DNA from: Thecamonas trahens ATCC 50062 | Taxonomy: Eukaryota > Protista > Apusomonadida | Length of the DNA stretch: 53,135 bases | NCBI RefSeq assembly: GCF_000142905.1 | Contig: NW_013657637.1 | Location: 271,595 to 324,729, forward strand | Direction of reading: 5' to 3' | In this document: positions 1 to 22,820 of the stretch, piece after piece | How positions within the stretch are numbered: position 1 is the first letter of the stretch | How the letters are laid out: the number at the start of each line of letters is the position of its first letter | Notes under the pieces: generated by a model | Told to the model about the DNA's origin: nothing | What the model saw: only the letters and a program-made list of their open reading frames with translations | Database searches by the model: none | Program-made: the position numbers and the translations under genes

Positions 1-12
1 CTTGCAACAACC

Positions 13-1085: not shown

Positions 1086-1199
1086 GCCATCGCCAAAGCC
1101 GTCAGCTGAGCCGGCCTAGCTGGCCGGTGGTTGAGCACTGCATTTTTTTTGATGACAACCGCGTGTTGAGTAAACCAGCCACCGTCACCCGATCCGCCG

Positions 1200-2486: not shown

Positions 2487-2893
2487 GTGGGTGCAACTCG
2501 GTCGGGCGACCCTTTGCTAGCAGCGGTGGGAGTGGTGGGTGGTGTGTCCTAGTTGCTGTGTCTTGTGCCTTGGGGGGAGGGGGAGGGGGGGAGGTCGAGG
2601 GGAACAACAAGGTGTCAGGGCGGGGGGGGGCGGCAGGCAGGACCGACCAGAGGTGGCCAACAAGAGGACGAGCGGTTGCTCCGAGCATTACAACCAACGA
2701 AAATAATCGTCACTCATCATGTTCCGTCATGGTTCGTCGTCACGTGCCACAATCGTTGCAATCGACATCAAACACGACTCATTCCCCCCCCCAAACCTCC
2801 CAACCCCGACCCTCTGACCCCCGCACCACACCCACACCGACAGACTGCACTCTCGTCCCCCCCCCCCCCTCCCCCCTCCCCACCCCCAACTGC

Positions 2894-5800
2894 ATGTTTA
2901 CTACGCCCCACCGTACACCAATGGGTGGGCGGAGCCGTGTACCTGCTACGCCTTGGCTAGCTACACCGTCCCGTCCAACGCCTTCGGCCACCTCGCTGAC
3001 GGCAGGCATGCGAGTGGCAGGCACAGCAGCAGGAGGACGACAACCAGGACATCCGACAGAACTGGATTCAGCAGCAGCATCACTTCTGGCTAGCCCCTCC
3101 ACCCATACTACTGCTGCTGCTGCTGCTACTGCTGCTACTGCTGCTACCTTTGAGGAGCATGATGCCTCCTCTCCCCTCGCTCCCTTTGCCCATTGGCATG
3201 CCCTCGTCCCAGCTCCACTCGCTCCCAGAGAGTGGAAGTCGGCAAAGGCTGGTCTGGTGCCCAAGACCCGTGGATCTCGACATGGCTTTATTCTTGTCTT
3301 TGCTGATCTCCAGTCGTTGTCTCATGCCACTCCGTTTGCGGGTGCGACTCGGTCTCCCGAAGATTCGTTCTCTCTGGCTGCGCCGGCTCGTGCACCAGCT
3401 CTTGTGGTCAAGCTCGTGGCTCATCCGCTGGAAGAGGCCTTTGCTACCGGTGTAGTGGAGGAGGTCTTTGGTCTTACCACACCGCGTGCTCGCTGGATTT
3501 GTCTGGACTCTCAGGAAGCAGCAGAGCTGGTCGATGTCCTCGCTGAACTCGATCCAGAGCGGGCTCAGCCGTATGTGGAGGCACTCGCTCAATCGGCACC
3601 TGCTGCCATCCAGGTCCAGCGGTATGTGCCTGGCGGGCCGTCGCGCAACCTGCGGTACCTCGATCCCGACGCGTGTGCGGGTGTGTTTGGTGTGCCCGGC
3701 GAGCTCACCGCGCACGGCCGCCGGGTCCTCCAGGACATCGGCCGCATGCTCATCGCTGACCTGTTGCTCAACAACTACGGCCGCCTCCGCTGCCGTGCCG
3801 TCTGGCCGTACAACATTGGCAATGCCAAGAACGTGCTCTTTGCCGCAGACACCGGCGGTCTCGTGGCGCTCGACCAGTGCCTCAACGCTTACGACCCGCT
3901 CCGCCACGCCACCGCCCTCGACAAGTACGCTACCGCCGTCCGCGACGTCCTTGCTGCCCTCTCTGCCCCGCTTGCCGATGCGCCACCACCGCCTGTTGAC
4001 CAGATCCGCCGCTTCATCCGCCAGAACTGTCGCTACGACATTGGCCGCGAGGGCTGCCACTGCGTCCACCTCGGCATGCTTGCCGGCCTTGCTGCCGTCC
4101 GTGGTGCCACTCTTGACACGCTCCGCGATGTCTTTGCATCCGCCGCCGCCGCCACCGCCGCCGCACCGGGCACAACAGCGCACTCACCGCCAACAGGCGA
4201 CCCGCCGCAGCTCGCCTTTGTCCTCGCCATGCGCGACGTCCTCGCCGCCGCCGGTGACACTGCGCAGGTCCACGCCGAGCTTGCCGAGCTCGCCTCTGCG
4301 CCAGCACTCCGTCGGCCTGACTTTGACGCCTCGCTGGCTGCCGACGACGAGGTCGCCGACGAGATCTCCGAGTTCTGGAAGCTCTCCGAGAGCCTCATGG
4401 ACATGTTTTCTGGCGATGGTGGAGCCTCGTCCTCGCTCTACGCCACACCGCTCCGCGACGCGGCCCGCGCCCGCGCCGCCGCCTCGTCGGCCGCCACTCC
4501 GGGCACACCCAACCTCTCTCCCATTCCGCCGCCGTCGCTCGGCTCAGACGCCGCCGCAAGCACAGACGCCTCGGCCCCGCGCTCCGCGCCGTCGCCCGAT
4601 GGCTTCTCGGCAGAGCTGGACTCGCCTTCGCGGCTTGCTCACCATCATCGCCACCACCGCCGCCGCCGCCGCAAGCACAGCTCACCGTCTGCTACGCCCG
4701 ACGAGCCATCCGACGCCTCGGCCTCAGCACCGTCGCGCCGACGCAAGCACCGTCATCATCATGGCGACGACAGCGAGCCGGCTGGGCCCGCCTCCGAATC
4801 GGACATTGCGCCGCCGTCCTCGCCGCCGCCTACGCTCGTCGCGGATGACAACGATAGCGAGGTCATGTCGCGCAAGGCCAAGGCCAAGTCGCGCAAGGCC
4901 AAGGCCAAGTCGCGGAAGGCCAAGTCGCAGAAGGCCAAGTCGAAGAAAGCTCGCGCGGTGGCAGCCGCTGCAGCAGCCTCGGGCGCTGGCGGCGAGTTGG
5001 CGCCGTCGTCGGCGGCAGCCAAGCTCCGCCCGGCCTTTTCGGACGTCAACAACATCCGGTTCCACCACGGCGACCGGACGGTACTCATGGCGAAGCTCGC
5101 GCCGCTGCCGATGTCGTCGACCTCGGCCGCGCTCCTCGCGTACGCTACCGCTGTCATCAACTATCGGCTTACTTTTCGTGAAGTCGTCCTCGCCTACAAG
5201 TGCTCGTACGTCCACAACGACGGACCGGTCCTCTCGGCAACGTTCCACAAGCCGTCGGCTGCCATAGACGCTGCACTCGAGTGCGCCGCCCGCGCCATCG
5301 CTCTCCGCGCTGGCTCCACCGTCCTCGGCTCGCTCGCGCCACCGGTCTTTGCCCTCGCCCATGGCGGCGGCCTCCTTGTCGACAAGTTTACGCTCCGCCA
5401 GTTTGGCGTCGCCGTCGACGTCGCGCTGCAGCTCTTGTTCCGTGTCGACCACCCGGTCGCGCTTGACGCTCCGCCGGCCATCCTCGCCGCCCCAGCCACC
5501 ATGCTCGCTCTTTCCAAGCGCGAGCGTGCCGCCTTTGCCAAAGCCGGCGTTTCGTTTGCGCCGCACGCCTCGGACCGCCTCGACTTTGAGGCCACGGCGG
5601 TCATCTATCCGGCCACAGATGCACTCGACGACGACATGGAGCTCTCGGCCCTTGCCCTCCTCAAGCAAGAACAGGCTGTCGGCTACGTCGAGACGCTGCA
5701 TGGAAACATGACGCCTGCCATGCGGTTCCGCAAGCTCATGGTCGCCCGCGCCGCGCCGTCGACAGCCCTCTCGCCGTCCAAGCTCAATCACATCGACGGC

Positions 5801-8800
5801 GTGCTCACCTCGGCTGCCTTTTTTGGCTTGCGCGCCATGGTCGCCCTCGGCTTTGACTGGATGACCGTCCCAGGCCTCACCTCGGCCGAGGACGTCATCT
5901 CTAAGATGCGTGCTGCCATGGCTCTTCTCCAGCCGGTTGTCCTCGCTCACGGCGGCACCTTTTACGAGGAGTTTCTCTACGAGTTTGAGTCACCGTCGGT
6001 TGCTCTCGCCGCCGCCATCGCCATCAAGCGCGAGCTCATCCACCACAACGCTTCGGCTTTTGTCCGCGAGCGTGCGCCGCTCCGCGGACTGGTCTGCTCG
6101 CATGGACCGACGCTGGCTGTCGAGGCCACAAACGTTCACTGGGGCCGACACGTCACGCTTGCCCAGCTCCTGCTCTCCTCGTTTGCTGTCACTGCCGCCA
6201 CCGTCGCCGACCCGCCGCTCATGCTCACTTCGGCCTTCCACGCCGCCCTCCTCGAGTCTTCCGACCCGAACATCGGCGCTCTCACCCTTGCGCCGGTCTC
6301 CTTCACCATCGGCGACGCCGCAGAGCGCTGCTACGCGGTCAAGGGCGACGCCGCCCTCGCGTCACCTTACAAGCAGCTCCTCGCCGCGGGTGCGGCGTCG
6401 ACACCGCCGCCGGCCTCGGCAGGCCCCCGCGCACCTGTGGCGTCGTCTGCGCTCAAGAACAAGTACACCTCGAGCCGACCGGCCGACGGCCCGCGCGTCC
6501 GCTTTGCGCTCTCGCCGCCGCCGTCGCCGCCGCTGCGCCCGCGGCTGCAGGCCTCGCCGTCGGCCGTGGCCTCCCCGCCGTCGCTTCACACTTGCGGCCC
6601 GGCCCGCGCTACCTCGCCGGTTGTGGTCAACTCGGGCGCGCTCGTCCTCGAGTCCTCGCCGGCTATGCATGTCTTCCGCGGTGGCCTCGCCGTCTTTGCC
6701 ACCTCGCTCGTTTGCCCGCTGCCAGCGAGCCCGGTCGCCGCCGCTGCGCTCACCTTTAAGCTCCAGGAGCTCTGCATGCCACTGCTGCAGTCGTTTGGCG
6801 CCCTCACCGTCCAACCGCAAGACTCGGGCGAGCTCGTTGCGCTGCTCCCAACACCCGCCGCCGCTGCCGCCGCCGCTCTCGCTGCCCACGAGCTCATTGC
6901 CGCTTTTAACCAAGATGCCGACGCCGCTGGCTCCTCGCTCTTGCTCCGCACCACTGGCTTTGCCGTCGTTACCGGCGACGGCTGCGCTCAGTCAGCTCAC
7001 CACGAGGCGCTACTTGTCTCGCCGCTCGTCGATGCTGCGCTTGCGCTCGCGTCCGCGTCTGACCTCTCATCCGCCATTCGGGTCTGCCTTGCTTCGGATG
7101 ACTTTGAGCTTGTCGATGACCTCGTCTCGCAGCCGCTTCTCGCCTCGGCGCACCTGCATCCCCTTACAGCACCGGCGGTCGGCGCCCGGCTTGCCCACCT
7201 GACCGGACGGTCCGCCCAGAGCCTCGCCCTTTACACAATCAGCGGCTCGCTCCCGTCCGAGGCCTTTGACGCCTCCGCGCTGCTCGCCGCAGGCGCGTCG
7301 GCCGAGGCCTCGTACTCGGGTCTGGACCTCGAAGCGCTGTTCCGAAGCGCAGCAGACGCGGCGCCGGCTGCCGCGGTCGTCGACTCGGTCACTGCCCACT
7401 ACGTTCGACAGCACGTGGCCATTGTTACGCTTGCCCGCCACCCGCGTCCAGACATGCCGCCAGCGGAGCAGCTCAGCACGTTCCTTGCCGTCCTCAATGA
7501 CGCCGTCGTCCCAGTCGTGGTTGACCAGTACGGCGGCGAGCGCATCTCGGCCACAGCCTTTGCCTTTGTCGACGACCTACTCTCGGCAACTTCAGCAGCG
7601 GTCCTCATTGCGTCGCAGCCTTTGCTCGCAGACGCCGGCGTCTCGGTCGTCATCTCCGACGGCGACGTGCTGGTCATTCCCTACTCTGACTCGACCGTGT
7701 TTATGGGCGAGCCGCTGCGGTCGCCGTACACTGCGCTTGCTGGAGCTAAGCGCTTGCATGCACCTCCCACCACCCGCGACCCTTCGCGAGTCACGCCACT
7801 GGTGCCGCTCCTTGTTGCCGCGCCGGTCATTGCCGCGCTCGCGCTCGTCGAGCCGTTTGCCTCGTGCTACGCGTACGCACCTGTCCGCGGCGCGCCAGAC
7901 TTCTCGTACGTGGCCTCAATCTCGCAGGACCCACGGGTGCTCGCCGGCGACGTCGTCGTCTCAGAGGACGAGGATACTCGTCACTTTGTTGGCCACGTTG
8001 CCGTCCTTGTCACCGACATGTCCGGCTTTACCCGCATCACCCGCGCCAAGGGCATTGTCCACTTTGCCTCGCTCATCCTCCGCATGCGCTCGCTCTTTAC
8101 GCCAATCTTTGAACTCTACGGCGCGCTCTCCATCAACACCGAGGCCGACAACTTTCTGGTTGTCTTCCCCTCGGCGGAAAAGGCGACTGCCGCTGCTCTC
8201 GAGGCCGCCCGCATGCTGCACCTGTACAACGCCGCTGTCGTAGCCGACCCGGCCGTCTCGGATGACTTTGTACTCAAGGTCGGCGGCTACGGCATTGCTG
8301 CAGGCCGCGGCTGCGTCCAGGACCTGATGTCAACTTCACTGTTTGGCGAGGTCTTTGATCGCGCCTTTCGCCTCGGCGAAGACGTCGCCGACGACAACAT
8401 CCTCATCGACGACACCACCGCCTCGCTGGCGGGCAAGCACCCCGCCTTTGCAGGACTTGACCTCTCCCGACTCCAGGTCGATGCCGAGACCGGCATTCGC
8501 TACACCACCATCGAGCTCGACGCTGCCGTCAGCTCTCTTGCCCGGTACCACGGCACGCTCCACATGGTCTCGTCCGAGTTTGACACCACTACGCCGCTCG
8601 GCTGGGTCTGCAACGCGGTCCTCAATGCCGCACCGGACGACGTCGCCGCCGCCGCTGCCGACGTCGGACGTCGCTACCTCGCGCCGGGTGCCATTCTCCT
8701 CATCGGCGTCGATCAGGCCAAGGTCACCGCCGCCGCCGGCATCGACGCCTCCATCCGCATGCTTCACCGCATGGTCCACGACCTCGAGCCGATCCTCATC

Positions 8801-11800
8801 GACGAGCTCGGCGGCTCGCTGGTTGAGGAGAAGATCTTCCTTTTCCGCTCGCCTGCCGCCGCCATCCGCGGCGCCGTCCTCGCACGTGCTCTCCTCAACG
8901 CAACCAACGCGTCAGCCGTCGCCACAGGCCTCCCGGCTGTGCCATGGACCGGCATTGCCGTTCACATCGGCGACATGCTCGTTGTTCCCGGCTCCAACAT
9001 CCACTGGGGCGACCCGCTCAACACAGCGTCCAAGCTCGCCGAGGACGTCGCGTCGGGCCAGGAGATCTTTGTCACCCGCGAGGCCTTTGACGCCGCTTGC
9101 GCCGAGAGCCCTGACCTCGCGCGCCTTCCGACCACGTCGCGGACGTTCCATGTCTCCAAGGTCGACCTGCCGTGCCTCGAGGTCGGCAACGGCGAGTGCA
9201 TTACCGCCGGTCGCGTCTTGGGAAGCGCGGCGGTGGGCGAGCACCGCGAGTCGCAGGTGAGGAGCGGCGAGGTGACCGCCGCCAGCGACGCTGCCGCCCG
9301 CGCCGCCTTTCTCCCACCGCCGCAGCCGGCCACCATCTCCCTGCACGACTCGATCGAGTTTACATCCGAGACCACACTGCTGGTCTCGGACATGTCGGGC
9401 TTTTCGCGAATCACCCGCAAGATGGGCATTATTCACTTTGCTTCGCTCATTTTGCGGATGCGGACACTGGCAAAGGGCGTGTACGAGCGATACGGTGTGC
9501 TTGAGTTCTTCACCGAGGCTGACAACACCTTTGGCCTTTTTGCCACACCGGCCGCTGCTGCCGCTGCCGCCTTTGAACTCAAGGCTGTTCTCGACGCGTA
9601 CAACGCCGAGGTGGCACCGGCAGCCGACTTTCGTATCAAGGTCGGTGGGTACGGCATGCACTGCGGGCCTGGCGTTGTCAAGGACACTGCCACGGGCAAG
9701 TTCTTCGGTACCGTCGCCGACGGCGCTTTTGTGCTCGGCGAAGACGTGTCCGAGGACGCTGCGCTCTACGTTTCGACACCGGTTCTCAGCGCGCTGGCGA
9801 CCGACGAGCGGTTCGCGCGTATGGACGTGGTGTCGTTCACGGCCGAAGACTCGCCAGACGCTCCGTTTGACTACCACGTTCTCGCATGCCCCGGTCTCAA
9901 TGGTACACTGCCAGCTGCGCAGCTTCTGACCAAGTTGATGGCGCCGGCGGCGTGGGCGCCAGCCGACAACACTACGGCCGAATCCCGATTCCTTGCGGCG
10001 GTCCTCGTCGACCGCCTCGCAGCCGGCACTACCGTCTCTGCGCTCGACGCCAAGCTGGCCGATGAGTTTATGGTCTCCGTCGCTGCTGTCCTGCTTATTG
10101 GCATGGACTTTGCGTCTGTGTCGGCCAGCTCGGGCGTGCCGGCCACGCTCGCGCTCGTCCACTCGCTCTCGGGCCTTTTGGCGACGGTTGCAAAGCGGTA
10201 CGGCGGCACGCCGCTGGAAGAGTTCATTTTCCTCTTTCCGGACGTCGACGCGGGCTATGCCGCTGGTCTCGCCATCCGGGCCGCACTTGTCGAGTACTCA
10301 ATGGCGCATCCAAATGCACCTGCGCCTCTCACAGGCCTTGCGCTCCACACCGGGTCGATGCTCATTGTGCCGGGCACAAACGTTCATTGGGGCGACCCGC
10401 TCAACACGGCGTCCAAGCTTGCCGAGGACTCGGCATCGTCGGCCGAGTTTCTGGTCACGCAGGCGGCGGCGAGGCTGCTGGCGTCGCGGGCCGGCGCCAC
10501 CTTTGTCGAGCGGTCGTTTGTAGTCTCCAAGGTCGAACTGCCGTGCGTGGAGGTGCTCGACGCTGTGGCGACAAGTGCGCTCGCGTCGCGTAAGGCTGTC
10601 CGAGCGCTCGGCATGGGCAAGCCGCTTCCGCAGTACGTGACGACCGACGCACACTGCAGGCACTACCACGGCGAGTACAGCGTGCTGATCTCGGACATGT
10701 CCGGCTTTACCCGGATCACGCGCAAGATGGGCATCATCCACTTTGCATCGCTGATTCTTCGCATGCGCGACATGCTCCTCGCCATCTACGGGGCGTGCGG
10801 CGCGGTCTCGACCTTTACCGAGGCCGACAACACCTTTGCAGTGTTCCGAACACCGGCCGCTGCGCTTCGCGCTGCACTCGAGGCCCAGGTTGCGCTGGCG
10901 CGGTATAACGCAACGTCTCTGCCCTCGCCGGACTTTGAGCTTCATCTTTCGGGCTTTGGCATCGACACCGGCGTCGGGCTGGTCCAGGACCTGCGGAGCG
11001 ACAAGCTGTTTGGCCCCGTCCACGACCGTGCCTTTGTCCTCGCCGAAGACACTGCCACCGGAACTGACATCCTCATCTCTGACGAGACCATGGCTGTGCT
11101 TGACGCCGACCGCGCCTTTGTCTGGCCGGCATCAATCACTGCCGAGGCCAAGGTCCTTGGTGAAGACGATTTTGCCGCGCCGTTTGGCTACTTTCATCTC
11201 CACGGGCGGCTCGCAGCAAGTGAGGTGACTCTCGGGCATTTGCCTGTCTCTGGCAGCCACACGCCGCGTGAGCCGCGGACGCCGGCATCCGAGTTCCACC
11301 ACGCGTTGCTGGTGGAGCGGCCGAGCGCACGCGGCGCGACCGAGCAGGTTGACGCGCAAGTGACAGCATCTTACATGCGGTCGCCGGTCTTCTGCCTCCT
11401 CATCGGCTTTGACTTTGCATCGGTGACGGCCACCACCGGCGTGGAGAACACCATTGCGCTCATGCACGGAGCCGAGGAGACAGTCCACGCCGCCATTGCG
11501 CCATATTCGGGCGAGGCTGTGGAGGAGTTTATCTTTGTCTTCAACTCAGCCAAGCTTGCACTCCTCGCTGGCCTTGCGGCTTCGGCCGCGCTCGACGAGT
11601 GGAATGAGCTGGCGTCGGCCGACCGCAAGCTCCCGCTGCTCGGCATGGCCATCCACGCCGGCTCAATGCTCATTGTGCCCGGGACGAACGTTCATTGGGC
11701 GACCCGCTCAACACGGCATCCAAGCTGGCTGAAGACTCGCTTGACGGCGGCGAGCTCTGTATTACCGTTCCGGTCTACGACGCCATATCGCGGCTCTCGG

Positions 11801-14800
11801 AGTTTGCCAACCTCGAATTTGAGAGCCGCGAGTATCTGGTCTCCAAGGTCACGCTCCCGTGCATGATTGTCCGGGCGCCGGATCGGAGCGGGACCCATTC
11901 GGACGCGCACTGCTTGCACTACGACGGCGCGCGCGCTGTGGTCAACGTCGATGTTGCCGGCTTCACCGCTGCCATGCGCGCTGCAGGCATCATCCACGCC
12001 GCGTACATGGTGCTGCGGATGCGGGCACTGCTTGGGCCTGTCTTTACCGCCCACGGCGCTGAACTTGTCCTCACTGAGGCCGACAATCTGGTGGCGGTCT
12101 TTGCCAGCGCCGACAACGCCGTTGCTGCCGCGTGCGAGGCCCACTACGTGATGAAGACGTACAACACATGGGCAAGCTCTGAGCTCGCCCCCACTTTGCC
12201 GTCCCGCTCTCGGGCATCGGTGTGGCATGGGGAACGGGCGTGGTCCAGGACAAGGTCACTTCGTCGCTCTACGGCGAGCCAGTTGACGAGGCTCACCATC
12301 TTGCGGACGAAGTTGCGACCGAAGCGCAAGTGCTCCTCACCAACAGTACCCGTGCTGCGCTCCGCTCATCAAGCCTGGCTTTGCGGCTGGCCCCGCTCCG
12401 CGCTTCGCGGGCCGAGCCTGCATCGATGTGGCCATTTGAGTATGTGGTTGTCGACGAGGCGACATGTTCGTCCACGCCGCGCAAGTCGCGCATGAGCAAT
12501 GTCGCCGCAAGCGCGCTCAACGAGGCCTCGACCGAGGCCGAGCTTGCAGAGCACGCCGGCGGTGCCGATGGGAGTGAGGCGAGCACGTTTATGAATCTGA
12601 TGCTGCAACTGCGCGGCGGCGCGGGCGCAGCGACCGACACTGTCGACGTGCTCGTCTCGCACAAGTTTGTGACCGAGGCGGCGGTGGTGTACGTGGCTCT
12701 CGACATGGCAGCGGTGACACGCAAGTATGGCTCTGTCAAGGCCATTGCAGTTGTCCACAACGCGGTGGCGATGGTGGCACAGGCAGTGGCCGAGCAGAGC
12801 GGCGTCTCTGTTCTCGAGCCGTTTGTGCTTGCGTTTGAGAACAAGGCGCATGGGGTCTCTGCTGCCATCGCCATTCTGCGGGCCATCGAGCGGTACAACA
12901 CAGAGTCGGTCTCGTCGGAGAACCGCATTCCGCTGCTAGCGGTCGGGTCGCCGCCGGCGAGCTGCTTGTGGTCGATGGAACCGACATCCACTGGGGCGAG
13001 GCGCTCAACACGGCGGCCAAGCTCGCGCACGTCATGGCGGCATCGCGGGAGCTGCTGGTGACCGAGGAAGTGGCCAAGGCGACGCGGAGCGACCCTGCAT
13101 TTGCTGCGCTTCGCTACGAGCCGCGCGAAGCGGTGGCCTCGGGGCTGGCCTTTAAGGCGTTTGCGGTCGAGTGGGCGTTTTTCGCGCGCGAGCTGCCGAG
13201 CTCGCCGGGCTCGCGCTCGGACGGGGTCCACTTCCGCGAGCTCTCGGGCACTCACGCGGTGGTGGTCTCGGACATGTCCGGCTTTACGCGGATTACCCGG
13301 GCCAAGGGCATTGTCCACTTTGCGTCGCTCATCTACCGCATGCGCGAGATCATCCGCGCAGCGTACGAGGCTGCGGGCGCGGTGGCGTTCCACACCGAGG
13401 CTGACAACACCTTTGGCGTATTTGAGAGCGCGGCGGCGGCGCTTGAAGGCGCGCTGCAAGCAAAGTCCGGGCTGCGGGCGTACAATGAGAGCGTGGTTGA
13501 TCCAGACCTTGCCATCGCGTTCTCTGGCTTTGGCGTCGACGTCGGCGAGGACCTCATCCGCGACACCGGCTCGCTCCGACTGTTTGGATCTGCAGCCGAG
13601 CGCGCGTTTGTGCTTGCCGAGGACACCGCCGACGGTGGGGCGGTCCTGGTCTCGGGTGCAGTTGCAGCACGTGTCCGTGGAACAGCTGCGTTCAAGCACG
13701 CCAAGTTTGTGCGGCAGACGTCAGATGAGCTCGACTTTGTGTTTTACGAGGTGATCGGCGGCGAGAGCCAAGCGACGGGCAGCTTGCCCCTCACCGGCGA
13801 GTATGCGCCGGCGCGCGAGGAGCATGTTCACGGCTCGCCGGCTGCGGTTTTCCGGACGGCCGTGCTCTCGTCGCCGCGGGCGCTGGACGTGGCTGCGTCG
13901 TTCCTCCGCCCGCACGCGGTCGTCCTCCTCGTCGGGCTCGAGTGGCGAAGTTTGACCGAGGCAGCCGGACCGCGCAAGGCTATTTTGGTGGCACACGAGG
14001 TGGCGGGCGTCGTCGCCGATGTTCTCAGCCAGCTCGGCGGGACCATGCTCGAGGAGTTTATCTATGCATTTGATTCGCCCGAGGCTGCCATTTCCGGCGC
14101 GCTCCAGCTCCGCAAGCTCTTTCGCGAGCGGACGGCCAAGCACGCCGAGGCCGAAGACGTGCCGCTCCTCGGGTTTGGCGTACACTCTGGCGAGATGCTC
14201 ATTGTGCCCGGGACCAACGTTCACTGGGGCGACCCGCTCAACACGGCGTCCAAGCTTGCTGAAGACATTGCGCGCGAGGGCCAGCTGTATGTGACGCAGC
14301 CGGTTTGGCACCGGCTCTCGGGCGAGTTCCGCCGCAGCCTGCGGGCCGGAACCGAGAGCCACACCGTGTCCAAGGTCGCGCTCCAGGTCATGCGAGTGGA
14401 CAATCCGGGACCGGTGTCTGGCGTCGCGGTGTCTGGCACTGTCCGCAGCGCACCGGCCGTGGGAGTCGTCGAAGACGCGCACACTCGACGGTACACCTCT
14501 GAGGTGGCGGTACTTGTTTCGGACATGTCGGGCATGTCGCGAACGACGGCCAAGTACGGAATCATTCACTTTGCGTACCTAATCCTCAAGATGCGCGACC
14601 TGCTCAGCGGGGTATGGGAGCACTACGGCGCCGTGTCTGTGGCGACTGAGGCCGACGACTTTATTGTGGTCTTCCCGTCGCTCGACGCGGCGCTGACCGC
14701 GGCGCTGGAGGCTTTCCACATCCTCGATGCGTACCACGCGGCGCTGCCTGCGGAGCGGCTGCAGGCCGAGCGGATCAACGTGTCCGGCTTTGGCATTGCT

Positions 14801-17800
14801 GTCGGCGATGATGTGGTGGCGGACGCAGTGACCGGGCGACTGTTTGGGTCCACATTCAACGAGGCCTTCCTCCTTGGCGAGGAGCTGACCGACGGTGGGC
14901 AGGTCCTACTGAGCACAGCTGCGGCGCGGCGGGTGATGTCGGACCCGCAATGGGCGTGCGTGGCGTGCGAGCCGCGGATGGATGTGGAGACGTCGACGAC
15001 ATTTGCGGTGGTTACTGGCAAGCTGCCTGCGTATGAGTGCAGTCTTGCGCAGATGAGCGTGCCCACCATTCCGTGGGGTGTGCACACGCCAGGCGGTGAG
15101 TTCTACACCGACATGCTTGTCAAGCGGCCGACGCTGGCCGGACGGGACCAGGCCGCGCTCGACGACGCTATCAAGGCGCGGTTCTTCTCCACCAAGTATG
15201 TGGTCATGCTCGGCTTTGACTTTTCGGCCAAGGAAGCGGCCGACTCGATTGATGCCGCGGTGGCGTCGATGCACACAGCTGTAGCCGAGACGCACCCGCG
15301 GGCTGCGGCGCATGGCGGCGTGGCGATTGAGGAGTTTATCTTTGCCTTTGACAGCGGCTCGGCGGCGTTTGCGGCGGCAAGTGACATGAAGGCGGCGCTG
15401 GTGGCGTGCGGCTTTGACGCTGTGCCATTTACTGGCATTGCGCTGCATGCCGGTGACATGCTCATTGTGCCCGAGACCAACGTCCACTGGGGCTCGCCGC
15501 TCAATACAGCGTCCAAGCTCTCCGAGGACGTGGCGAGTGCTGGTGAGTTCTTTGTCTCGCGCGTGGTCATGGACGAGCTCCGCAGGAACAGGCTGGTCCG
15601 GGATGTGGAGACTGTGGACCGTGTTTTTACCGTGTCCAAGATGGACTTTGAGTGTGTCGAGATATTGGGTACAAAGGGCGGCATTGCGAGCGCTAGCGCG
15701 AGCGAGAGCCCGGCACTGACCGCGGGCGACACCTCGATTATTTCGGTCGATTTGAACGGCAGCGACGACTTTGGCGTGAGTGCACTCGACACGAGCCAGG
15801 TCCTCGTGGTTGTGGGCATGCCATCCCTGGCACGCACGCTCCGGCGCGAGGGGCTCGAGGCACTGGCGTCGGCGGTGGTGCGGATGCAGCAACTTGTGGG
15901 CGGATGCATTGCGGCCGGTGGCGGCGAGGCATTTGGGCGCGGTGACGAGATTGTGGGCGTGTTTGACGACGCGCTGGTGGCGCTGCAGGTGGCAACCAAG
16001 ATTCACGAGGTGGTGCGCGAGTTCAACGCTGCAGCCGGCGCTGCGCGACTGTCGGCCATCGGGGTGGCGGTCGTGCCTGCAAGCACGACGCTTGTGGTCG
16101 CGTCGGTCGGCGGCGTGTACGGGCAAGACGTGGAGCTCGGGCGCGATCTTGTGCTTGAAGGCGCGGGGACCAAGACGGTGGTGGGGCGCGCGCTTGTGGC
16201 GAGCCTCTCTGAGCGGGCTTCGGGCGTCTCGTTTATTTCCGGCACGTCCGAAGGCGCGCACGTGCGCGAGTATGCGATGGTGTCTGGCGCTGTTGCCATC
16301 GACGGGCCGCTGGCGGAAGCGAGTGCAGCAAGGCTGTGCGCGAGCGTCGACGGGGCGCTGGGAGAGCTCGGCGCGGCGGCGCTGTCGGCCAACAACGGCG
16401 GCGCGCTGCGGGCGGGCTACATCGCGAGCCTGGCACTCGTTCGATTTGTCTTTGACTTTGGCGTCAAGCACGCGGATGGGCTTGCACAGCTTGCGCTCTC
16501 GATTGTGAGCGGGCTCGTACCGAGTGACGCGGTCGACTTTGGCGGACTGGTGTATGGCGTTTCGAACGTGGCGGACGGGCTCGAGTTTGCGCTCAACGTC
16601 CGCGACGCACTGGTGGAGTTTGGCGCGTCGGCGACGGGAGCGGCGACCCGCGAGCTGCCGTTTGTGGGCGGAGTGGTCAAGGCCGGGGAGGTTGTTCGCG
16701 ATGCAAGTGTGGGTGTGGTGTGGGGCGGGCCGGTGCTTGAGCTCAACCAGGCGTCGCACATGCTGCGTCCGGGTCAGGTTGTTGTCCTCTCGGCGTCGGA
16801 GGCGGATCTGGGCGACGACACACGGTTTGCCGGCCTAACGTTTGACAAGGCTGTGTTTGGCCGGTCGGTGACCGGGCTTGGGCAGCTGGCTGGTGTGCGG
16901 GTGTCGGGCGAGCGGAGTGCTCGGTCGGCGCCGGCGGTTGTGGTCGCTGGAAGCGAGAGCCTGCCACCGCGGACACCGCGTGGGCGTTCCGGCTCTGTCG
17001 ACTTTGATCTGGCTGTTCCTAGCTCGCCGAGCTTTGAGGCGCGCGGCTTCGACCTGCCGGACGTGGCCGAGGAGGCCGGCGCAAGCTCGAGCGCGAGCCT
17101 GATTGTGGTGCTTGCCGAAGTCCAGGTCAAGTCTTCGGGGAGCTCTGCGAGCGAGCTTGTGGCTGCTGGGTCGAGCGCTGTGCGATGGCGGTCTCTGGTC
17201 GATAGTGTGGCCGAAGTGCACGGCGTGACCAGCCTCAGCGTGCTGAGTGATGCGAGCGGGGTTCAGGGCCTCTGCGTCGGTGTTGTGTTTGGCAGCGATG
17301 AGAGTGCGTCTGCGCTCCAGTTTGCCGGCGAGCTTGTGGTTGTGCTGCAAGCGTTCAACGCGTCTGTTGACGACCCGGAGCTTGCGCTGCGGCTGGGAAC
17401 GGTGATGGTCCATGCTGGGCCGGGCGTGATTGTTGTGCCGGGCCTCGGCGCGGTGACCGGGCACGGGCTCGACGCCGGTTTGGCGGCGATGCGGAGACAG
17501 CCCCCGGCTGTGGCGCTTGCGGTGTCTGGCAGGCTAGCACCCAGCGGCTGCGGCTGGGCCCAGGTTGAGCGTGCGAGCGGGGTGGTGAACGGCCTGCCGG
17601 CTGGCGACGAGCTGCGCGTGGCGGTTGCAGAAGTCATCGGCAACGCATCCGGCGCCGAGGAGTCGTTCCAGGAGATGGCACTTGAGCGGTACAAGGCTGG
17701 CAAGGCGCACCGGAAGCGACTGGACCGGGTGCTTGCGCGGTTTGTGACAGCTCGTGCGGTGATTCATCTTGGGCTTTCGGTGATGGAGGGTGCGCCGGGC

Positions 17801-19324
17801 GGTGCGGCAGCGGCGCTCGAGGCCGCACACGCGGAGATGGAGGCGCTGACTGGCGCGCACGGTGGAAGTGCCAAGGCGCCGTTTACTGTGGCGTTCCACG
17901 AGACGGCCGGAGTTGGGGCAGCGCTGGCGCGGATTGTGGGCGCGCTCAACTCGGGCACGATGCTCTCGGGCGTTTCGGGCGTGTTGGTCAACGGCGTGGG
18001 CGTGGCGTTCTCGCCGATGGTCATCGACGCGGCGTCGCAGCTGTGTCTGGGGCCTGCGGCTGCGGCCGCGGCGGCCGGAGGCCGGTCGGGTAAGCTTGTT
18101 GTGTATGTTGGTGCCGAGGGCGTGACGCATGGCGTGGCGGCTGCCATGCCTGCCGAGCTTGGCCTGGAGCCCGTGGACGATGGCGAGTGCGAGTGGCGGT
18201 CGAGCGTGGTGCGGCTCGCGAGGCCGGCGGCCGGCGGCGGGAGTAGCAGCAAAGCAGCTTCTGTGCCTGGGCGCGCAAGCGGTGGCGAGTGCATTGTGTG
18301 GATCGACGTCGATGTGGGCGGCAAGGCCAGCGCCAGTGCGGGAGCGGTGACGCTTGCTGGTGCGCAGCGAGCGTTTTCTGATGCGCTGCTTGCATCTGGC
18401 GCAAGCGCGGTGACGACGGTGGGCGAAGCCGTTGTGGGCGTGCTACCTAGTGCGAGTGCAGCGCTCCGCGGCGGGTTCGAGGTCCTTCATGCCGCACGCG
18501 AGGTGACAGGCGGCGGGGCCGGCGTGCGCAAGATCGGAGTGGGCGTGGCCGGCGCCCATGGCGAGGTGCACGTAGCCGAGGGCATGGTGTTTGCACCGGG
18601 AGTGACGACGGCGGCGACGCTCGCCAAGGCTGTGCTCGGGCGAAGCGGCGAGGTGGGCGCTGAGAGCCGGGTGGCGAGCGCCGGACTCCGGGCGCATCCT
18701 GGACTCAGTGCATCGTCCAAAGTCTCGCAGTCGCGCGGTACAGCGTATGCGGTGGTTCGTGGCGAGCTCGGCTCGTATGCCGGAGTGGCTATTAGCCGGC
18801 CGGAGTCAAGCACTGTGCACGAGACGGCGTGCGTGAGCGTGGCGTTTGGCATCGACTACGGGTACGTGACTGCGCAGCTGGGCGGGCCCGTGGCGGCGGC
18901 AGCGTGCGCGCGGCGGGTGACGGCCATGATTGCCGGCGCCGCCGGTGAGGCCGGGCGAGTTGTGGGCGTCGACGCTGCGGTGTTTACAGGCCAGGTGGAG
19001 CATGTGGCGGCGATGGCAGTGGCGGCTGCGCGCAAGGTCCGCGACGGCATCCGGGCACACAACGCGCAGGCGAGCGCGGATGGCGGTGCGATCATCCCGC
19101 TGCGGTCTGTGGCGGTATTCGACGGCAACGTGGCATGGGAGCCGAGTGTGTGGGGCCCAGGGCTTCGCGACGCGCGAACGCTCGCGCACTCGTACCTGTT
19201 CGAAGGTGGGCGGGTGTTTGCGACCGAGGCCGTCAGCGCAGCAGCCGGCAGCGCTGCCCAAGCGGATGTGGACGTCGAGTATCTGGGACTGAGGGAAGTC
19301 CAGATGTGCGAAGTGGCTCGGTAA
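2894..19324 (+). CDS. Giant (~5,480 aa) protein: actin-fragmin-kinase-like domain plus ~11 tandem pairs of class III nucleotidyl cyclase domains; three apparent 1-nt assembly deletions
   Basis: ORFs 2558-11866, 11695-12495, 12222-13061 and 12968-19324 join through single-base deletions at ~11698, ~12190 and ~12946. Repeated D(M/V)(S/A)G(F/M)...TEAD(N/D) domains alternate with HWG(D/S/E)(P/A)LNTA(S/A)KL domains. The N-terminal region has DIGRMLIADLLLNNYGRL...GNAKNVLF...ALDQ. Start codon uncertain (2894 is a plausible ATG just downstream of the C-rich upstream tract). Confidence 0.85.
4868..4950 (+). repeat. Short coding tandem repeat SRKAKAK/SRKAK within the basic linker of the giant protein
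   Basis: TCGCGCAAGGCCAAGGCCAAG repeated twice, followed by shorter degenerate copies. Confidence 0.8.
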
Positions 19325-19381: not shown

Positions 19382-21631
19382 TCAGTGCGAGTCTGAAATG
19401 ACGCGACCCGAGGGCGACTTGACGCGGATGCGGCCGGACGGGTAGCGGGTCTCCTGGCGGCCGTCTGGGAAGACGGTGCGGACGACACCGTCTGCGCACG
19501 TTCTCCGCTTTGTGCCGTCCTTCTCGTGGACCTCGCGGTCGCCTGAGGGGAAGGAGATGGTGCGGACGCCGTCTGCGGCGACGCGCTGGGTGGTGCCGTC
19601 CGGGAAGCGAGTCACCTCCTCGCCCGAGGGCATGACGGTCTTTGTGGTGGAGTCCTGGAAGATGATCTCCTTCTTGCCCGAGGGGTAGTGCTTCTCGACT
19701 TGGCCAGTAGTACCAAACTCAAAGACCTCCAGGCCGTCGTCGTACGAGGTGTGGCGGGTCTTGGCCTGGGCGTAGTAGTAGACCTCGCGCTTGTCGGGTG
19801 CTGGGAACGACTCGCGGATGTCACCGTTGCCAAAGAGGACGACGACGTGGTCGCCGCGAATCTGCTTCTGGGTGCCGTTGGGGAAGCGGACGCGGCGCCA
19901 GCCCGAGGCAAACACCTCCTCGACCTTGCCGTTGTCGTGCTGGATGACCTCAACGGGGCGCTCATCGTCGTCGGCGTCGGGTGGTGGTGGATGGGCAGCG
20001 GGTGAGGCCTGGTGCGCCGGCTTGGTTGTGGCCTCGAGCGCACGGTCGATGTCGTCGCCAGACTCTGAGAAAAAGTAGGGCGAGGAGGAGGAGGCCGAGG
20101 TTGGTGAGGGCGAGGGTGAGGGGGAGGTGTGGGCGGGCTTGGCGCTGGCGCCGGCCGCAGCCTGTGGCGGGGTATAGTAAAAGCGCTGGACCTGATCCTG
20201 GAAGCGGACCGAGCGGGCGTCGTGTGGGTCGTCGGCGAGCGGCGACGAGCGCGAGGGGGGGTGGGTGGCCGAGGAGGCGGTCGAGCGGCGGAGGCGGGCC
20301 TCGAGCTCGCGGACCTTGGCGTGAAGGTCAGCGATGAGGTCGTCTTTGGCGTCGAGCTCGCGAACTTTTTCTGCGATCTCGTCGTCCTTGGTGTTGAGCT
20401 CGCGCGAGTAGCGTGTTGCCTTTGTGCGGAGGACCTCCAGCTCGCGATCTGTCGACGCCGACTGTGACTTGATGGCGTCGAGCTGATCCCAGGCGTCGAG
20501 GCGCTCGTCGGAGATGACTTGGACCTGGTGAGCGAGGTCAGCGACGCGAGCCTCCGACGACTCCAGCTTGGACTTTGTGCGCTCTAGGGCGGACTTGAGC
20601 TTGGCTTCGCGGTCGCGCGCGGCGGCGCGTGCATGGGCGAGGGCCTCGTTGAGCTCGTCAATCTCGCGGCGGTCGGCCTTGGACGGCATGGAGGCCAAGG
20701 AGCGGTGCATTTTCTCGAGGCGCTCGCGCTGGCGGGCCAAGTCCATCTTCTCGCGACGCTTGTAGTCCTCAAACTCGGCCTCGGCCTCGGCCTTTTGCTT
20801 CTCAAACTCGGTGACGTCCATGCGGAGGCGCTGGAGTGCGAGCTCCTTCTCGGAGCGGACGGCGCGGATCTTGCGGTTCTCCTCCTTGAAGTTTGCGATT
20901 TCGAGCTCGAGCAGCTCGAGCTTCTCACGGATCTCGGCCGACATGGGCTCGTCGGCGTCGTGCTGGTGCGGGTTTGGGTGCGGGTGCGCGCGCGGTGGCG
21001 GAGCAGCGGCGCCGAAACGGGCCTGGACCAGCGCGGAGCGCGGCGGCGAGGCCTCGGGTGATGAGTGGTTGTGCGGCGGATCGCGGGAGCGCGGCGGCGA
21101 GTGTGACGGCTGAGGCGGATACTCGGGCTCATTCCACTCCTCGTCGTCGTCAAAGAGTGCCGAGGCGCGGTCGTAGGCGTCGTCGTAGTGGGCTGCGGCG
21201 GCCGGTGGGTCGTAGTGGGCCGGTTGCCGAGGCGCCGACTGTAGCTGGCTCCGCTGCGCCATCTGGCGCTCCGACTCGGCCATGATGTCGGCTTCGAGGG
21301 CGGTAAACTCGTCCAACTCCTCCTTCTCGCGGCGGCGGGCCTCGGCCCATTCATCGTCGCCCATGTGCCCACCTTCGGGCACATCATCAAAGTACCGGCG
21401 GGCTTGGTTCTCCTCGGCAGCGGCGCTCGGGGCGTCGTCGGCAAAGTAGAGCTCGTTGTCGTCGGCGTACGGATCGTCGTACAAGCCGAGACCACTGCCT
21501 GGTGAAGCTGGCGGCTGGGTCCGTGGCTGAGGCGAGCGAGGCGGAGAGCGAGAGGCCTGTCTCCCGTTCTGGGGTGGCGACGACGGCGGTGAGGATCTCC
21601 TCTTCCGCCGCTTGCCCTTGGACGAGCCCAT
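19382..21631 (-). CDS. CENPJ: Centriolar protein SAS-4/CPAP (centromere protein J) with coiled coil and C-terminal TCP10/G-box domain
   Basis: Central coiled coil (LELEIANFKEEN...). C-terminal Gly-repeat beta-sheet domain: FPNGTQKQI...VLFGNGDIRE...EVYYYAQAKTRHTSYDDGLEVFEF...GQVEKHYPSGKKEIIFQD...QETRYPSGRIRVK. Confidence 0.9.
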   Translation of the reverse strand: MGSSKGKRRKRRSSPPSSPPQNGRQASRSPPRSPQPRTQPPASPGSGLGLYDDPYADDNELYFADDAPSAAAEENQARRYFDDVPEGGHMGDDEWAEARRREKEELDEFTALEADIMAESERQMAQRSQLQSAPRQPAHYDPPAAAAHYDDAYDRASALFDDDEEWNEPEYPPQPSHSPPRSRDPPHNHSSPEASPPRSALVQARFGAAAPPPRAHPHPNPHQHDADEPMSAEIREKLELLELEIANFKEENRKIRAVRSEKELALQRLRMDVTEFEKQKAEAEAEFEDYKRREKMDLARQRERLEKMHRSLASMPSKADRREIDELNEALAHARAAARDREAKLKSALERTKSKLESSEARVADLAHQVQVISDERLDAWDQLDAIKSQSASTDRELEVLRTKATRYSRELNTKDDEIAEKVRELDAKDDLIADLHAKVRELEARLRRSTASSATHPPSRSSPLADDPHDARSVRFQDQVQRFYYTPPQAAAGASAKPAHTSPSPSPSPTSASSSSPYFFSESGDDIDRALEATTKPAHQASPAAHPPPPDADDDERPVEVIQHDNGKVEEVFASGWRRVRFPNGTQKQIRGDHVVVLFGNGDIRESFPAPDKREVYYYAQAKTRHTSYDDGLEVFEFGTTGQVEKHYPSGKKEIIFQDSTTKTVMPSGEEVTRFPDGTTQRVAADGVRTISFPSGDREVHEKDGTKRRTCADGVVRTVFPDGRQETRYPSGRIRVKSPSGRVISDSH

Positions 21632-21761
21632 ACCCGCCGACAGCGGACGCGAGCCCTTTTTCAGAAACGGGCGCCGACCCTGTGCGTGCCCGGCGGCCTG
21701 TCCATCACCAGTAGCATCAGCACTGTTGCTGGCCGAGTGGGGACGGTCTTGGTCGCGAGGA

Positions 21762-21955
21762 TCGTGGGGATCGTGGGGATCGTGGGGATCGTGGTGTTGG
21801 TGGTAGTGGTGGTGGTGGTGTTGGTGGTGGTGGTCATCGTCGAGCTCATCGTAGCTGTGTGGTTGTCTGGGCGCATGTGGTCTGGTGGTGGTGTTGGTGG
21901 TGGTGTTGGTGTTGGTGTTGGTGTTGGTGTTGGTGTTGGTGTTGGTGTTGGTGGG
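21762..21955. repeat. Compound microsatellite (GGATCGTGG)n / (GGT)n / (GGTGTT)n
   Basis: Directly visible repeats upstream of CENPJ, close to the assembly gap. Confidence 0.9.
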
Positions 21956-22086
21956 AGCAGGCCCGGCACCTGCTGCTTCGGCCTTGCGCAGTTCCCTCTC
22001 CAGGAGCTCTTCGAACGTCAGCTGTGCTCCCGATGACTGAATGGGGATTTCGTCCTGTAGGGTGGTTGGGGAGGAGGGGGAGGAGG

Positions 22087-22620: not shown

Positions 22621-22689
22621 GATGTGCCGACGCTAAAATTCATACTGGCTCATGATGTAGGACGCCTTGTCCGACTTAGACTGAGGAGA

Positions 22690-22820
22690 CGTGTGGGTGT
22701 GGGTGTGGGTGTGGGTGGTGGTGTGGTGGTGGTGTGGTGGGTGGTCAAGTGGGTGGTGTGGGTGGTGTGGGTGGTGGGTGGTGGGTGGTGTGGGGGGTTG
22801 GTTGGTGAGTGGTGTGGCGG
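22690..22820. repeat. G/T-rich low-complexity repeat (GTGGGT)n/(GGT)n
   Basis: Directly visible. Confidence 0.85.

What the first reader, a model, noticed from the sequence alone, without database searches (positions are those of the whole stretch)
2894..19324. Giant 'poly-cyclase': ~11 tandem pairs of class III nucleotidyl cyclase domains in one ~5,480-aa intronless protein
Seen: after repairing three 1-nt deletions the frame runs 16.4 kb. It contains six well-conserved A domains, with the first Asp codons at ~8015, 9389, 10694, 11950, 13271 and 14522, and each is followed by a B domain. Degenerate pairs flank them (two at ~5050-7920, three at ~15790-19320). Known: class III cyclases normally have one catalytic domain (homodimer) or two (C1/C2 pseudo-heterodimer). 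Inference: a chain of about 22 cyclase-fold domains with no TM segment is an architecture I do not recognise. It may be an undescribed signalling enzyme or scaffold.
Basis: partly seen in the sequence, partly recalled or inferred. Interest (0 to 1): 0.92.

Follow-up and report, generated by a model that had tools for sequence, protein, structure and literature searches.

The report
Giant eleven-unit tandem cyclase protein
One intact gene of the marine flagellate Thecamonas trahens encodes a ~5,480-residue soluble protein made of eleven back-to-back copies of a two-domain nucleotide-cyclase core. Six copies keep their catalytic residues, and I found no description of such a design in the papers I could search.

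Summary
A + strand frame runs from 2474 (ATG 2894 or 2729) to the stop at 19322-19324. It is broken only by three -1 frame changes.

Reads from another run of the same organism, a marine metagenome and a metatranscriptome show one extra base at the first break. The organism's run shows one at all three, and the metagenome supports the second and third. So these are errors of this assembly, and the gene is intact (about 5,477 aa).

It holds eleven ~430-aa units, each an A plus a B class III cyclase-homology domain. A model of one unit (pLDDT 88) superposes as a whole on the C1·C2 catalytic cores of mammalian AC9 (Z 29.5) and soluble AC (Z about 25).

Units 3-8 keep two metal-binding Asp in A, and Asn plus Lys (in place of Arg) in B. 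Units 1, 2, 9, 10 and 11 have lost them. An actin-fragmin-kinase-like domain sits at the N-terminus.

The same cyclase subfamily occurs in bacteria as single-domain and A-B proteins. It also occurs in this genome and in metagenomes as 2-, 3- and at least 5-unit proteins. Eleven is the most found.

Catalysis, product and a single full-length transcript are untested. I rate it a new variant of a known kind. Other first-stage notes of this scan cover the same stretch.

The parts
2894..19324 (+). Whole gene. Single exon, about 5,477 codons once the three bases missing from this assembly are counted. The frame is open from 2474, and an alternative ATG lies at 2729.
3386..4120 (+). N-terminal actin-fragmin-kinase-like domain.
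   Evidence: Pfam Act-Frag_cataly E 1.2e-4, 22 bits, below the 24-bit cut-off. PDB 1cja E 1.6e-4 over residues 89-306. The D..NN stretch and the later Asp align with those of 1cja, while the SDR Asp aligns with Gly.
4868..4951 (+). Lys/Ala-rich basic tract (SRKAKAK repeats) in the linker before unit 1.
5036..6733 (+). Unit 1, degenerate (A 5036-5542, B 5801-6352). Metal Asp, Asn and Lys are lost; HWG is kept.
   Evidence: (65 bits).
6734..7957 (+). Unit 2, degenerate. Includes a Pro-rich hydrophobic stretch at 7790-7846.
   Evidence: 40 bits; hhalign E 3e-12, 291 columns.
7958..9352 (+). Unit 3, conserved (A 7958-8464, B 8660-9196). First Asp codon at 8015.
   Evidence: the only Pfam Guanylate_cyc hit; 389 bits.
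9353..10639 (+). Unit 4, conserved (A 9353-9817, B 10052-10555). First Asp codon at 9389.
   Evidence: (399 bits).
10640..11895 (+). Unit 5, conserved. First Asp codon at 10694. Its HW|GDPLNTASKL motif is split by the first assembly gap.
   Evidence: (375 bits).
11696..11697 (+). Assembly error 1: one G missing from a G run.
   Evidence: the extra G is present in X1, X5 and X14.
11896..13216 (+). Unit 6, more diverged (about 30% identical to the other core units) but keeps both Asp, Asn and Lys. First Asp codon at 11950. Holds assembly errors 2 and 3.
   Evidence: (277 bits).
12187..12189 (+). Assembly error 2: one base missing in a C run. Other runs read 6 letters with an A inside where this assembly has CCCCC.
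   Evidence: X1 and X5.
12944..12945 (+). Assembly error 3: one G missing from a G run.
   Evidence: X1 shows it, and a loose end in X5 agrees.
13217..14467 (+). Unit 7, conserved (A 13217-13696, B 13886-14404). First Asp codon at 13271. This is the unit that was modelled.
   Evidence: pLDDT 88.4, pTM 0.87; 395 bits.
14468..15760 (+). Unit 8, conserved (A 14468-14968, B 15167-15664). First Asp codon at 14522.
   Evidence: (415 bits).
15761..17095 (+). Unit 9, degenerate (A 15761-16213, B 16400-16915). First Asp and Lys are lost; second Asp and Asn are kept.
   Evidence: (47 bits).
17096..18241 (+). Unit 10, degenerate.
   Evidence: 16 bits; hhalign 95%, E 3e-8, 273 columns across A and B.
18242..19321 (+). 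Unit 11, the most degenerate. The protein ends directly after it.
   Evidence: E 0.002; hhalign 89%, E 2e-6, 284 columns across A and B.

Best explanation
This is one intact, intronless gene of Thecamonas trahens. It encodes a soluble multi-site class III nucleotidyl cyclase.

Each ~430-aa unit folds on itself into a head-to-tail pair of cyclase-homology domains, like C1·C2 of mammalian adenylyl cyclases. Domain A supplies the two metal-binding Asp (DMSGF, TEADN). Domain B supplies the ribose/transition-state Asn and a Lys where canonical enzymes have Arg (HWGDPLNTASKL). That gives one complete active site per unit and one degenerate pocket.

Units 3-8 would therefore give six active sites on one chain. 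Units 1, 2, 9, 10 and 11 have lost the catalytic residues and would act as structural or regulatory modules. The N-terminal actin-fragmin-kinase-like domain and the basic tract would place or regulate the array.

The array most likely grew by repeated in-frame tandem duplication of an A-B unit. The A-B unit itself derives from a single-domain, homodimer-type cyclase that is still common in bacteria.

Shown: gene integrity, unit count, fold, residue pattern and family distribution. Inferred: catalysis, the product (the purine-specifying positions are non-canonical), and the roles of the dead units and the N-terminus.
For: Intact gene:
- all three frame breaks carry an extra base in at least one other run. 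The first is seen in three runs, the second in two, and the third in one plus a loose end.
- contigs of the same organism and of metagenomes cross the unit boundaries in the same order.
- between-strain differences are 12 synonymous to 9 non-synonymous, after dropping 3 that came from a mislaid contig end.

Fold:
- model pLDDT 88.4, pTM 0.87.
- the whole unit matches AC9 C1+C2 at Z 29.5 (rmsd 3.1 A over 339 residues), AC5 at 29.2 and human soluble AC at about 25. Each half matches single-domain cyclases at Z about 20.
- sequence profiles agree.

Catalytic pattern:
- D, D, N and K are kept in U3-U8 and lost in U1, U2 and U9-U11. This contrast within one protein argues that the residues are kept by selection.
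- across 46 family members D19, E61, D63, E135, G338, D339, N342, S345, K346 and D350 are invariant or nearly so.

Ancestry:
- 75 of the 80 best bacterial genome loci are single-domain proteins that carry both the A-type and the B-type motifs.
- 94 of 153 proteins with a domain call (the 150 best representatives plus five cluster members) are A-B.
- three A-B proteins lie in bacterial gene contexts.
- U3, U4, U5, U7 and U8 cluster together.

A multi-unit design is kept across species: the three units of P0001 pair one-to-one with those of T. trahens AMSG_03955.

The organism has a large cyclic-nucleotide toolkit: at least 42 Guanylate_cyc, 58 cNMP-binding and 14 PDE matches.
Against: - No activity data exist for any member of this subfamily. 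NCBIfam has no model for it, and Pfam barely sees it.
- Arg is replaced by Lys family-wide, and the two purine-specifying positions are neither Lys/Asp nor Glu/Cys.
- A solved bacterial tandem-domain protein of the same overall shape is titled an 'adenylyl cyclase-like ATP-binding protein' (6yii, Z 24.2). So this fold and arrangement do not guarantee cyclase activity.
- RNA evidence is only short contigs from one metatranscriptome, which could include DNA. A single 16-kb transcript and a ~570-kDa protein (my estimate from 5,477 residues) have not been shown.
- Only one unit was modelled.
Confidence: 0.6

Rival explanations
1. It is a nucleotide-binding pseudoenzyme array or scaffold. The units bind ATP/GTP, or another ligand, at the A/B interface but do not cyclise it. 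The protein then works as a giant sensor, buffer or docking platform.
For: - Arg to Lys at the transition-state position, and non-canonical base-specifying residues.
- 6yii, a tandem-domain bacterial protein of the same shape, is described in its PDB title as an ATP-binding protein rather than a cyclase.
- Five of the eleven units are clearly non-catalytic.
Against: - Both metal Asp, the Asn and the Lys are near-invariant across 46 distant family members. They are also kept together in the single-domain bacterial forms, as expected of working enzymes.
- Within this protein the same residues decay wherever the rest of the unit decays.
- 6yii is not a detectable sequence relative of this family.
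Confidence: 0.25
2. It is a polyprotein. The chain is cut in the linkers into separate ~45-kDa A-B cyclases, and the array is a way to make many copies from one message.
For: - Units are self-contained in the model.
- Linkers between core units are short, Ser/Ala/Gly/Pro-rich and poorly conserved.
- Stand-alone A-B proteins exist.
Against: - No conserved cleavage motif, such as a dibasic site, is present in the linkers.
- The units are only 37-43% identical, and five are degenerate, which would be wasteful for a copy-number device.
- The three units of AMSG_03955 and of P0001 pair one-to-one, and each unit is distinct.
Confidence: 0.05
3. It is a decaying pseudogene, several adjacent genes, or a repeat artefact of the draft assembly.
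For: The window as assembled has three frame breaks within 1.25 kb. The assembly is a draft with N gaps and a redundant contig for the 5' end.
Against: - All three breaks are closed by at least one other run.
- Beyond the breaks, frame 1 stays open for another 6.4 kb, while the other two frames carry 88 and 125 stops between window positions 1500 and 20500.
- Units are too diverged (37-43% at protein level) to be collapsed or expanded by an assembler.
- Contigs assembled separately from other runs cross the unit boundaries.
Confidence: 0.03

Closest known systems
Mammalian membrane adenylyl cyclases, C1a·C2a catalytic core (AC9, AC5, AC8; PDB 6r3q, 8sl4, 8buz)
   Same: - One chain carries two diverged cyclase-homology domains that pair head to tail.
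- One domain gives the two metal Asp and the other gives the Asn plus a basic residue, so there is one active and one degenerate site.
- These are the best structural matches to the whole unit: Z 25-29.5, about 340 residues aligned.
   Different: - There is one core per protein there, against eleven in a row here.
- Those enzymes have 12 transmembrane helices and G-protein control, while this protein is soluble.
- Sequence identity is only 11-15%.
- Here Lys replaces Arg, and the Lys/Asp adenine-specifying pair is absent.
Soluble adenylyl cyclase (ADCY10) catalytic core (PDB 4clk and others)
   Same: It is a soluble protein with tandem C1-C2 in about 470 residues. The whole unit aligns at Z about 25 over about 335 residues.
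   Different: - It is not detectable by the family's sequence profile even at E 10, so the tandem arrangement here probably arose separately.
- It has a single core per chain.
- Whether the bicarbonate site residues are present was not tested.
Pseudomonas aeruginosa 'class III adenylyl cyclase-like ATP-binding protein' (PDB 6yii)
   Same: It is a bacterial single-chain tandem cyclase-homology protein of the same overall shape (Z 24.2, 344 residues aligned).
   Different: It is not a detectable sequence relative and has one unit only. Its title calls it an ATP-binding protein. What I recall of its lack of cyclase activity is from memory and was not checked here.
Single-domain bacterial class III cyclases (Ma1120 of Mycobacterium avium, PDB 4wp8/5d0g; Silicibacter pomeroyi 3mr7)
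   Same: They are the closest solved relatives by sequence: E 4e-12 to 4e-10 for A and 1e-3 for B. Each half of the unit superposes at Z about 20, rmsd 2-2.7 A.
   Different: They are homodimers of one domain that carries all catalytic residues. They have Arg, not Lys.
P4-ATPase-guanylate cyclases of alveolates (for example the 477-kDa Toxoplasma enzyme, bioRxiv 10.1101/475848; PMC13466520)
   Same: It is a protist cyclase of very large size with a pseudo-heterodimeric pair of cyclase domains (abstracts listed).
   Different: Its size comes from a fused flippase and about 21 transmembrane helices, and it has only two cyclase domains. Here the size comes from the cyclase domains themselves.

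Membership tests
Class III nucleotidyl cyclase superfamily (cyclase-homology domain) | The cyclase-homology (palm-like) fold. | tested here: met
   The model of U7 has pLDDT 88.4. Both halves match solved class III cyclases at Z about 20, rmsd 2-2.8 A. Foldseek finds at least 175 PDB hits at E<=1e-3, and every hit listed is a cyclase or cyclase-like protein.
Class III nucleotidyl cyclase superfamily (cyclase-homology domain) | Sequence match to Pfam PF00211 above the gathering score. | tested here: inconclusive
   Only the A domain of U3 passes (25.5 bits against a 21.9-bit cut-off). No B domain passes. In the six-frame genome scan with PF00211 none of the 42 matches at E<=1e-5 lies on this contig. 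Profiles of the units do reach solved cyclases at E 4e-12 for A and 1e-3 for B.
Class III nucleotidyl cyclase superfamily (cyclase-homology domain) | Two metal-binding Asp. | tested here: met
   Both are present in the A domains of U3-U8, where they align with the Asp of 3mr7 and Ma1120. They are invariant or nearly so in the family and lost in U1, U2, U10 and U11. U9 has lost the first and kept the second.
Class III nucleotidyl cyclase superfamily (cyclase-homology domain) | The transition-state Asn-x-x-x-Arg pair. | tested here: not met
   Asn is present in the B domains of U3-U8, but the Arg position is Lys there and in 45 of 46 family members.
Class III nucleotidyl cyclase superfamily (cyclase-homology domain) | Purine-specifying pair, Lys/Asp for adenylyl cyclases or Glu/Cys(Ala) for guanylyl cyclases. 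| tested here: not met
   The equivalent B positions are Thr/Ser/Val/Glu and Val/Ile. The residue one position before is Asp in most family members and Asn in five of the six conserved units (Asp in U6). The position mapping rests on sequence alignment only.
Class III nucleotidyl cyclase superfamily (cyclase-homology domain) | Head-to-tail dimer with active sites at the interface. | tested here: met
   The whole-unit model superposes on C1·C2 assemblies at Z 25-29.5. This is a prediction, not an experiment.
Class III nucleotidyl cyclase superfamily (cyclase-homology domain) | Cyclase activity (NTP to cNMP plus PPi). | not testable with these tools
   This needs a biochemical assay.
Soluble adenylyl cyclase (ADCY10) family | Sequence relationship of the C1-C2 core. 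| tested here: not met
   No soluble-AC chain is reached by the family profile at E<=10. The resemblance is structural only.
Actin-fragmin kinase family (N-terminal domain only) | Sequence match to the catalytic domain. | tested here: inconclusive
   Pfam gives E 1.2e-4 but 22 bits against a 24-bit cut-off. PDB 1cja gives E 1.6e-4 over about 220 residues. Catalytic competence was not settled.

The most novel reading that the evidence does not exclude
Tandem arrays of complete cyclase cores are a distinct signalling design. One polypeptide carries six active sites of a previously uncharacterised cyclase subfamily, marked by Lys in place of Arg and a non-canonical base pocket. It may therefore make a product other than cAMP or cGMP. 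The array is anchored by a kinase-like head, its dead units act as allosteric modules, and its unit number changes by unequal crossing-over, as a 12-unit-type joint in one metagenome hints.
Probability: 0.3. Interest if true: 0.85.

Novelty: new variant of a known kind. Interest (0 to 1): 0.7.

Why it matters
As far as I know, every characterised class III cyclase works as a dimer of one or two catalytic domains per chain. A chain with 22 such domains, 11 self-paired cores of which six look competent, breaks that rule. It raises testable questions:
- Do several active sites on one chain give cooperativity or a very local burst of second messenger?
- What do dead cores do?
- How does such an array grow?

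The work also brings out an uncharacterised cyclase subfamily with a fixed Lys where Arg is expected. It is present in many bacteria, including cultured Leptospira, as single-domain proteins, and as two-domain proteins in other bacterial contigs. These small members are easy to express, so the chemistry can be tested without touching the protist.

The single-domain, A-B and array forms parallel the accepted origin of animal adenylyl cyclases, apparently independently.

Practically, the locus is a reminder that three homopolymer errors in a draft assembly can hide a 16-kb gene. No product of this locus appeared in the two protein searches that could have shown it.

Tried and rejected
- Pfam on the raw pieces gave one weak Guanylate_cyc hit and nothing for 2,118 residues of the C-terminal piece. 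Pfam on B domains gave nothing. NCBIfam gave nothing useful.
- The search for homologous proteins found few relatives because of its word and length filters. It found no product of this locus at 1,165-3,706 aa.
- Ten literature searches found no paper on cyclase arrays. The hits were congenital heart disease, calponin-homology 'CHDs' and terpene cyclases.
- The DUF2652 paper (PMC4886424) concerns another family. The text held for PMC2447327 was too short to help.
- Introns, programmed frameshifting and pseudogene decay as causes of the frame changes were rejected.
- Two of the three 'goes back' joints (10767 to 9500, and 15400 to 14195) are artefacts of the ends of the laid stretch. The contig parts lying outside it found the paralogous unit. 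I dropped the three 'differences' at 10714-10735 that come from this.
- My first reading, that 159 bacterial species carry A-B proteins, was wrong. One search shows that 75 of the 80 fetched loci are single-domain proteins.
- The quick tree has many long branches and open forks. I draw from it only the clustering of the core units and the one-to-one pairing of P0001 with AMSG_03955. I draw no direction of gene transfer.
- Complex prediction was not used, because the single-chain model already shows the A:B pairing.
In scripts the frame breaks were read through with X only.


Full report
**The frame**

On the + strand, frame 1 is open from 2474 to 11863. Frame 0 is open from 11608 to 12492, frame 2 from 12183 to 13058, and frame 1 again from 12839 to the stop at 19322-19324. 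Between window positions 1500 and 20500 the other two frames carry 88 and 125 stops.

Each change of frame is -1. A profile of the repeat unit runs through all three without losing a position. The first break falls inside the motif HW|GDPLNTASKL at about 11697. The second falls at 12187-12189 in a C run, and the third at 12944-12947 in a G run. So these are single-base indels, not introns.

**The breaks are errors of this assembly**

I laid contigs of four public runs on 9500-15400 (5,901 letters).
- An extra G after 11696 is present in X1 (the same organism, deposited 2020), in X5 (a marine metagenome) and in X14 (a metatranscriptome).
- An extra base at 12187/12188 is present in X1 and X5.
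- An extra G after 12944 is present in X1, and a loose end of X5 agrees.

With these bases the frame is continuous. That gives 5,477 codons from the ATG at 2894 or 5,532 from the ATG at 2729.

Contigs of X1 and X5 cross the unit boundaries in the order of the window. After three differences from a mislaid contig end are dropped, the differences between runs are 12 synonymous to 9 non-synonymous. This fits purifying selection in the frames I assign.

X14 places RNA-library contigs of at least 99% identity on eight stretches between 9535 and 14735. This suggests expression but does not prove it, and it does not show one transcript.

**The organism**

Earlier notes of this scan name Thecamonas trahens. 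I checked this. Protein P0003 is AMSG_03955 of T. trahens ATCC 50062. It is 100% identical over 1,332 residues to a locus of the window's own genome.

**The repeats**

Self-comparison of the pieces gives alignments of 32-36% identity over 850-1,000 residues. An iterated internal profile finds eleven units of about 430 residues.

A profile built from 42 outside proteins plus four window units scores U3-U8 at 277-415 bits. It scores U1 at 65, U2 at 40, U9 at 47, U10 at 16 and U11 at 3 bits. The three weakest units were not part of that profile. Each aligns collinearly across both of its domains in hhalign: U2 E 3e-12, U10 E 3e-8, U11 E 2e-6.

Five of the six conserved units (U3, U4, U5, U7, U8) are 37-43% identical to each other. 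U6 is about 30% identical to them, and the degenerate units about 20%.

**Each unit is two cyclase domains**

The A profile reaches solved class III cyclases at E 3e-11 to 4e-12, and the B profile at E 1e-3. A and B are homologous to each other (hhalign 97.7%, E 1.5e-12).

An AlphaFold2 model of unit 7, made with a 46-sequence alignment, has pLDDT 88.4 and pTM 0.87. As a whole it superposes on the C1·C2 cores of AC9 (Z 29.5, rmsd 3.1 A, 339 residues), AC5 and AC8. It also superposes on human soluble adenylyl cyclase (Z about 25) and on a P. aeruginosa tandem 'adenylyl cyclase-like ATP-binding protein', 6yii (Z 24.2). Each half matches single-domain cyclases at Z about 20.

Neither soluble AC nor 6yii is reached by the family's sequence profile. 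The tandem arrangement here is therefore probably an independent invention.

**Catalytic residues**

In U3-U8, domain A keeps both metal-binding Asp (DMSGF, TEADN). It lacks the Asn/Arg pair. Domain B keeps the Asn and has Lys where canonical enzymes have Arg (NTASKL).

U1, U2, U10 and U11 have lost all four residues. U9 keeps the second Asp and the Asn but has lost the first Asp and the Lys.

Across 46 distant family members the same residues, plus a few further acidic ones, are invariant or nearly so. The two positions that specify adenine or guanine in known enzymes are non-canonical, so the product cannot be predicted.

The split of residues between A and B means one complete site and one degenerate pocket per unit, as in animal adenylyl cyclases. 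The decay of exactly these residues in the degenerate units of the same chain is my main argument that they are kept for function in the six core units.

**The family**

A profile search of 1.84 billion representative proteins finds 4,542 relatives, 113 of them below 1e-30. Of the 153 proteins that gave a domain call (the 150 listed plus five cluster members), 94 are plain A-B proteins of about 400-550 residues. A few are longer arrays:
- ABAB;
- ABABAB, which includes T. trahens AMSG_03955 and an environmental protein, P0001, whose three units pair one-to-one with it;
- a 2,120-residue metagenome protein with at least five units on a GC-rich contig.

The three A-B proteins nearest the window's core units sit among bacterial genes.

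In bacterial genomes the same motif is mostly found in single-domain proteins. These combine the A-type N-half with the B-type C-half, which is the expected homodimeric ancestor. They account for 75 of the 80 best loci, including cultured Leptospira.

The window's genome holds at least eight further loci with one to three units. It also has a rich cyclic-nucleotide toolkit. Eleven units is the largest number seen anywhere in these searches.

In a quick tree the core units U3, U4, U5, U7 and U8 cluster together, next to bacterial A-B proteins. This fits growth by intragenic duplication. The direction of any transfer between bacteria and eukaryotes is not settled.

**Other parts of the protein**

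The N-terminus resembles the catalytic domain of Physarum actin-fragmin kinase (Pfam E 1.2e-4, below the cut-off; PDB 1cja E 1.6e-4). Another first-stage note calls it a pseudokinase. In the alignment one Asp is replaced by Gly, but the D..NN stretch and a later Asp are kept, so I leave that open.

A Lys/Ala-rich tract follows at 4868-4951. Linkers between the core units are short and carry no conserved cleavage motif. One Pro-rich hydrophobic stretch at 7790-7846 is the only candidate membrane segment.

The neighbouring genes are ordinary eukaryotic genes and give no functional hint.

**Verdict**

The most likely reading is a giant soluble multi-site cyclase with six working cores and five dead ones. 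The main rival is a nucleotide-binding pseudoenzyme array. Pseudogene, several genes and assembly artefact are contradicted.

I found no description of such an array in the papers I could search. That library lacks most subscription journals. No product of this locus appeared in the two protein searches that could have shown it.

It is a new variant of a known kind. The chemistry can be tested on the small bacterial relatives.

Noticed in passing
window 10379-11686: One 694-nt contig of marine metagenome X10 joins 11686 directly to 10379. That is a step back of 1,308 nt, or 436 codons: exactly one unit, in frame, with 13 shared letters at the joint. It could be a 12-unit allele made by unequal crossing-over between units 4 and 5, or it could be an assembly chimera.
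   Followed up: partly
window 1-4801; G000 contig C86 (L096, L097): A 12.4-kb contig of the same assembly repeats window 1-1201, 2532-3385 and 3823-4801 at 97-99.9% identity, with N gaps between. It is a redundant or allelic copy of the 5' end of this locus.
   Followed up: yes
L017-L094 (bacterial genome loci), for example L046, L049, L066 (Leptospira) and L092 (Psychrosphaera algicola): A widespread, apparently uncharacterised bacterial subfamily of single-domain class III cyclases carries the motif N-T-A-S-K-L-G-Q-D, with Lys where Arg is expected. No NCBIfam model was found for the A-B members tested.
   Followed up: partly
L011 (ENA contig k119_156321), 88-6450: A GC-rich (65-70%) metagenome contig encodes a 2,120-residue protein with at least five A-B units. 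It is the only other long array found. An in-frame stop lies just upstream, so its true start is unclear.
   Followed up: partly
G000 contigs C4, C9, C11, C16, C18, C19, C31, C36: The same genome holds at least eight further loci with one to three A-B units, some inside open frames of 2,200-3,050 residues. These include AMSG_03955 (three units) and AMSG_04486 (two units).
   Followed up: partly
window 19382-29649: The neighbouring genes are a CPAP/Tcp10_C centriole-type protein (19382-21631, - strand), an F-actin-bundling ABP34-like protein (22924-23682, - strand), an SH3 protein (24119-26587, + strand) and a Na/Ca exchanger (27367-29649, + strand). Two N gaps lie at about 22088-22620 and 23738-23836, flanked by GT-rich microsatellites.
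   Followed up: partly
window 7790-7846: A 19-residue hydrophobic stretch with three prolines lies in the linker between units 2 and 3 (Kyte-Doolittle 2.3). It is the only candidate membrane segment in the protein.
   Followed up: no
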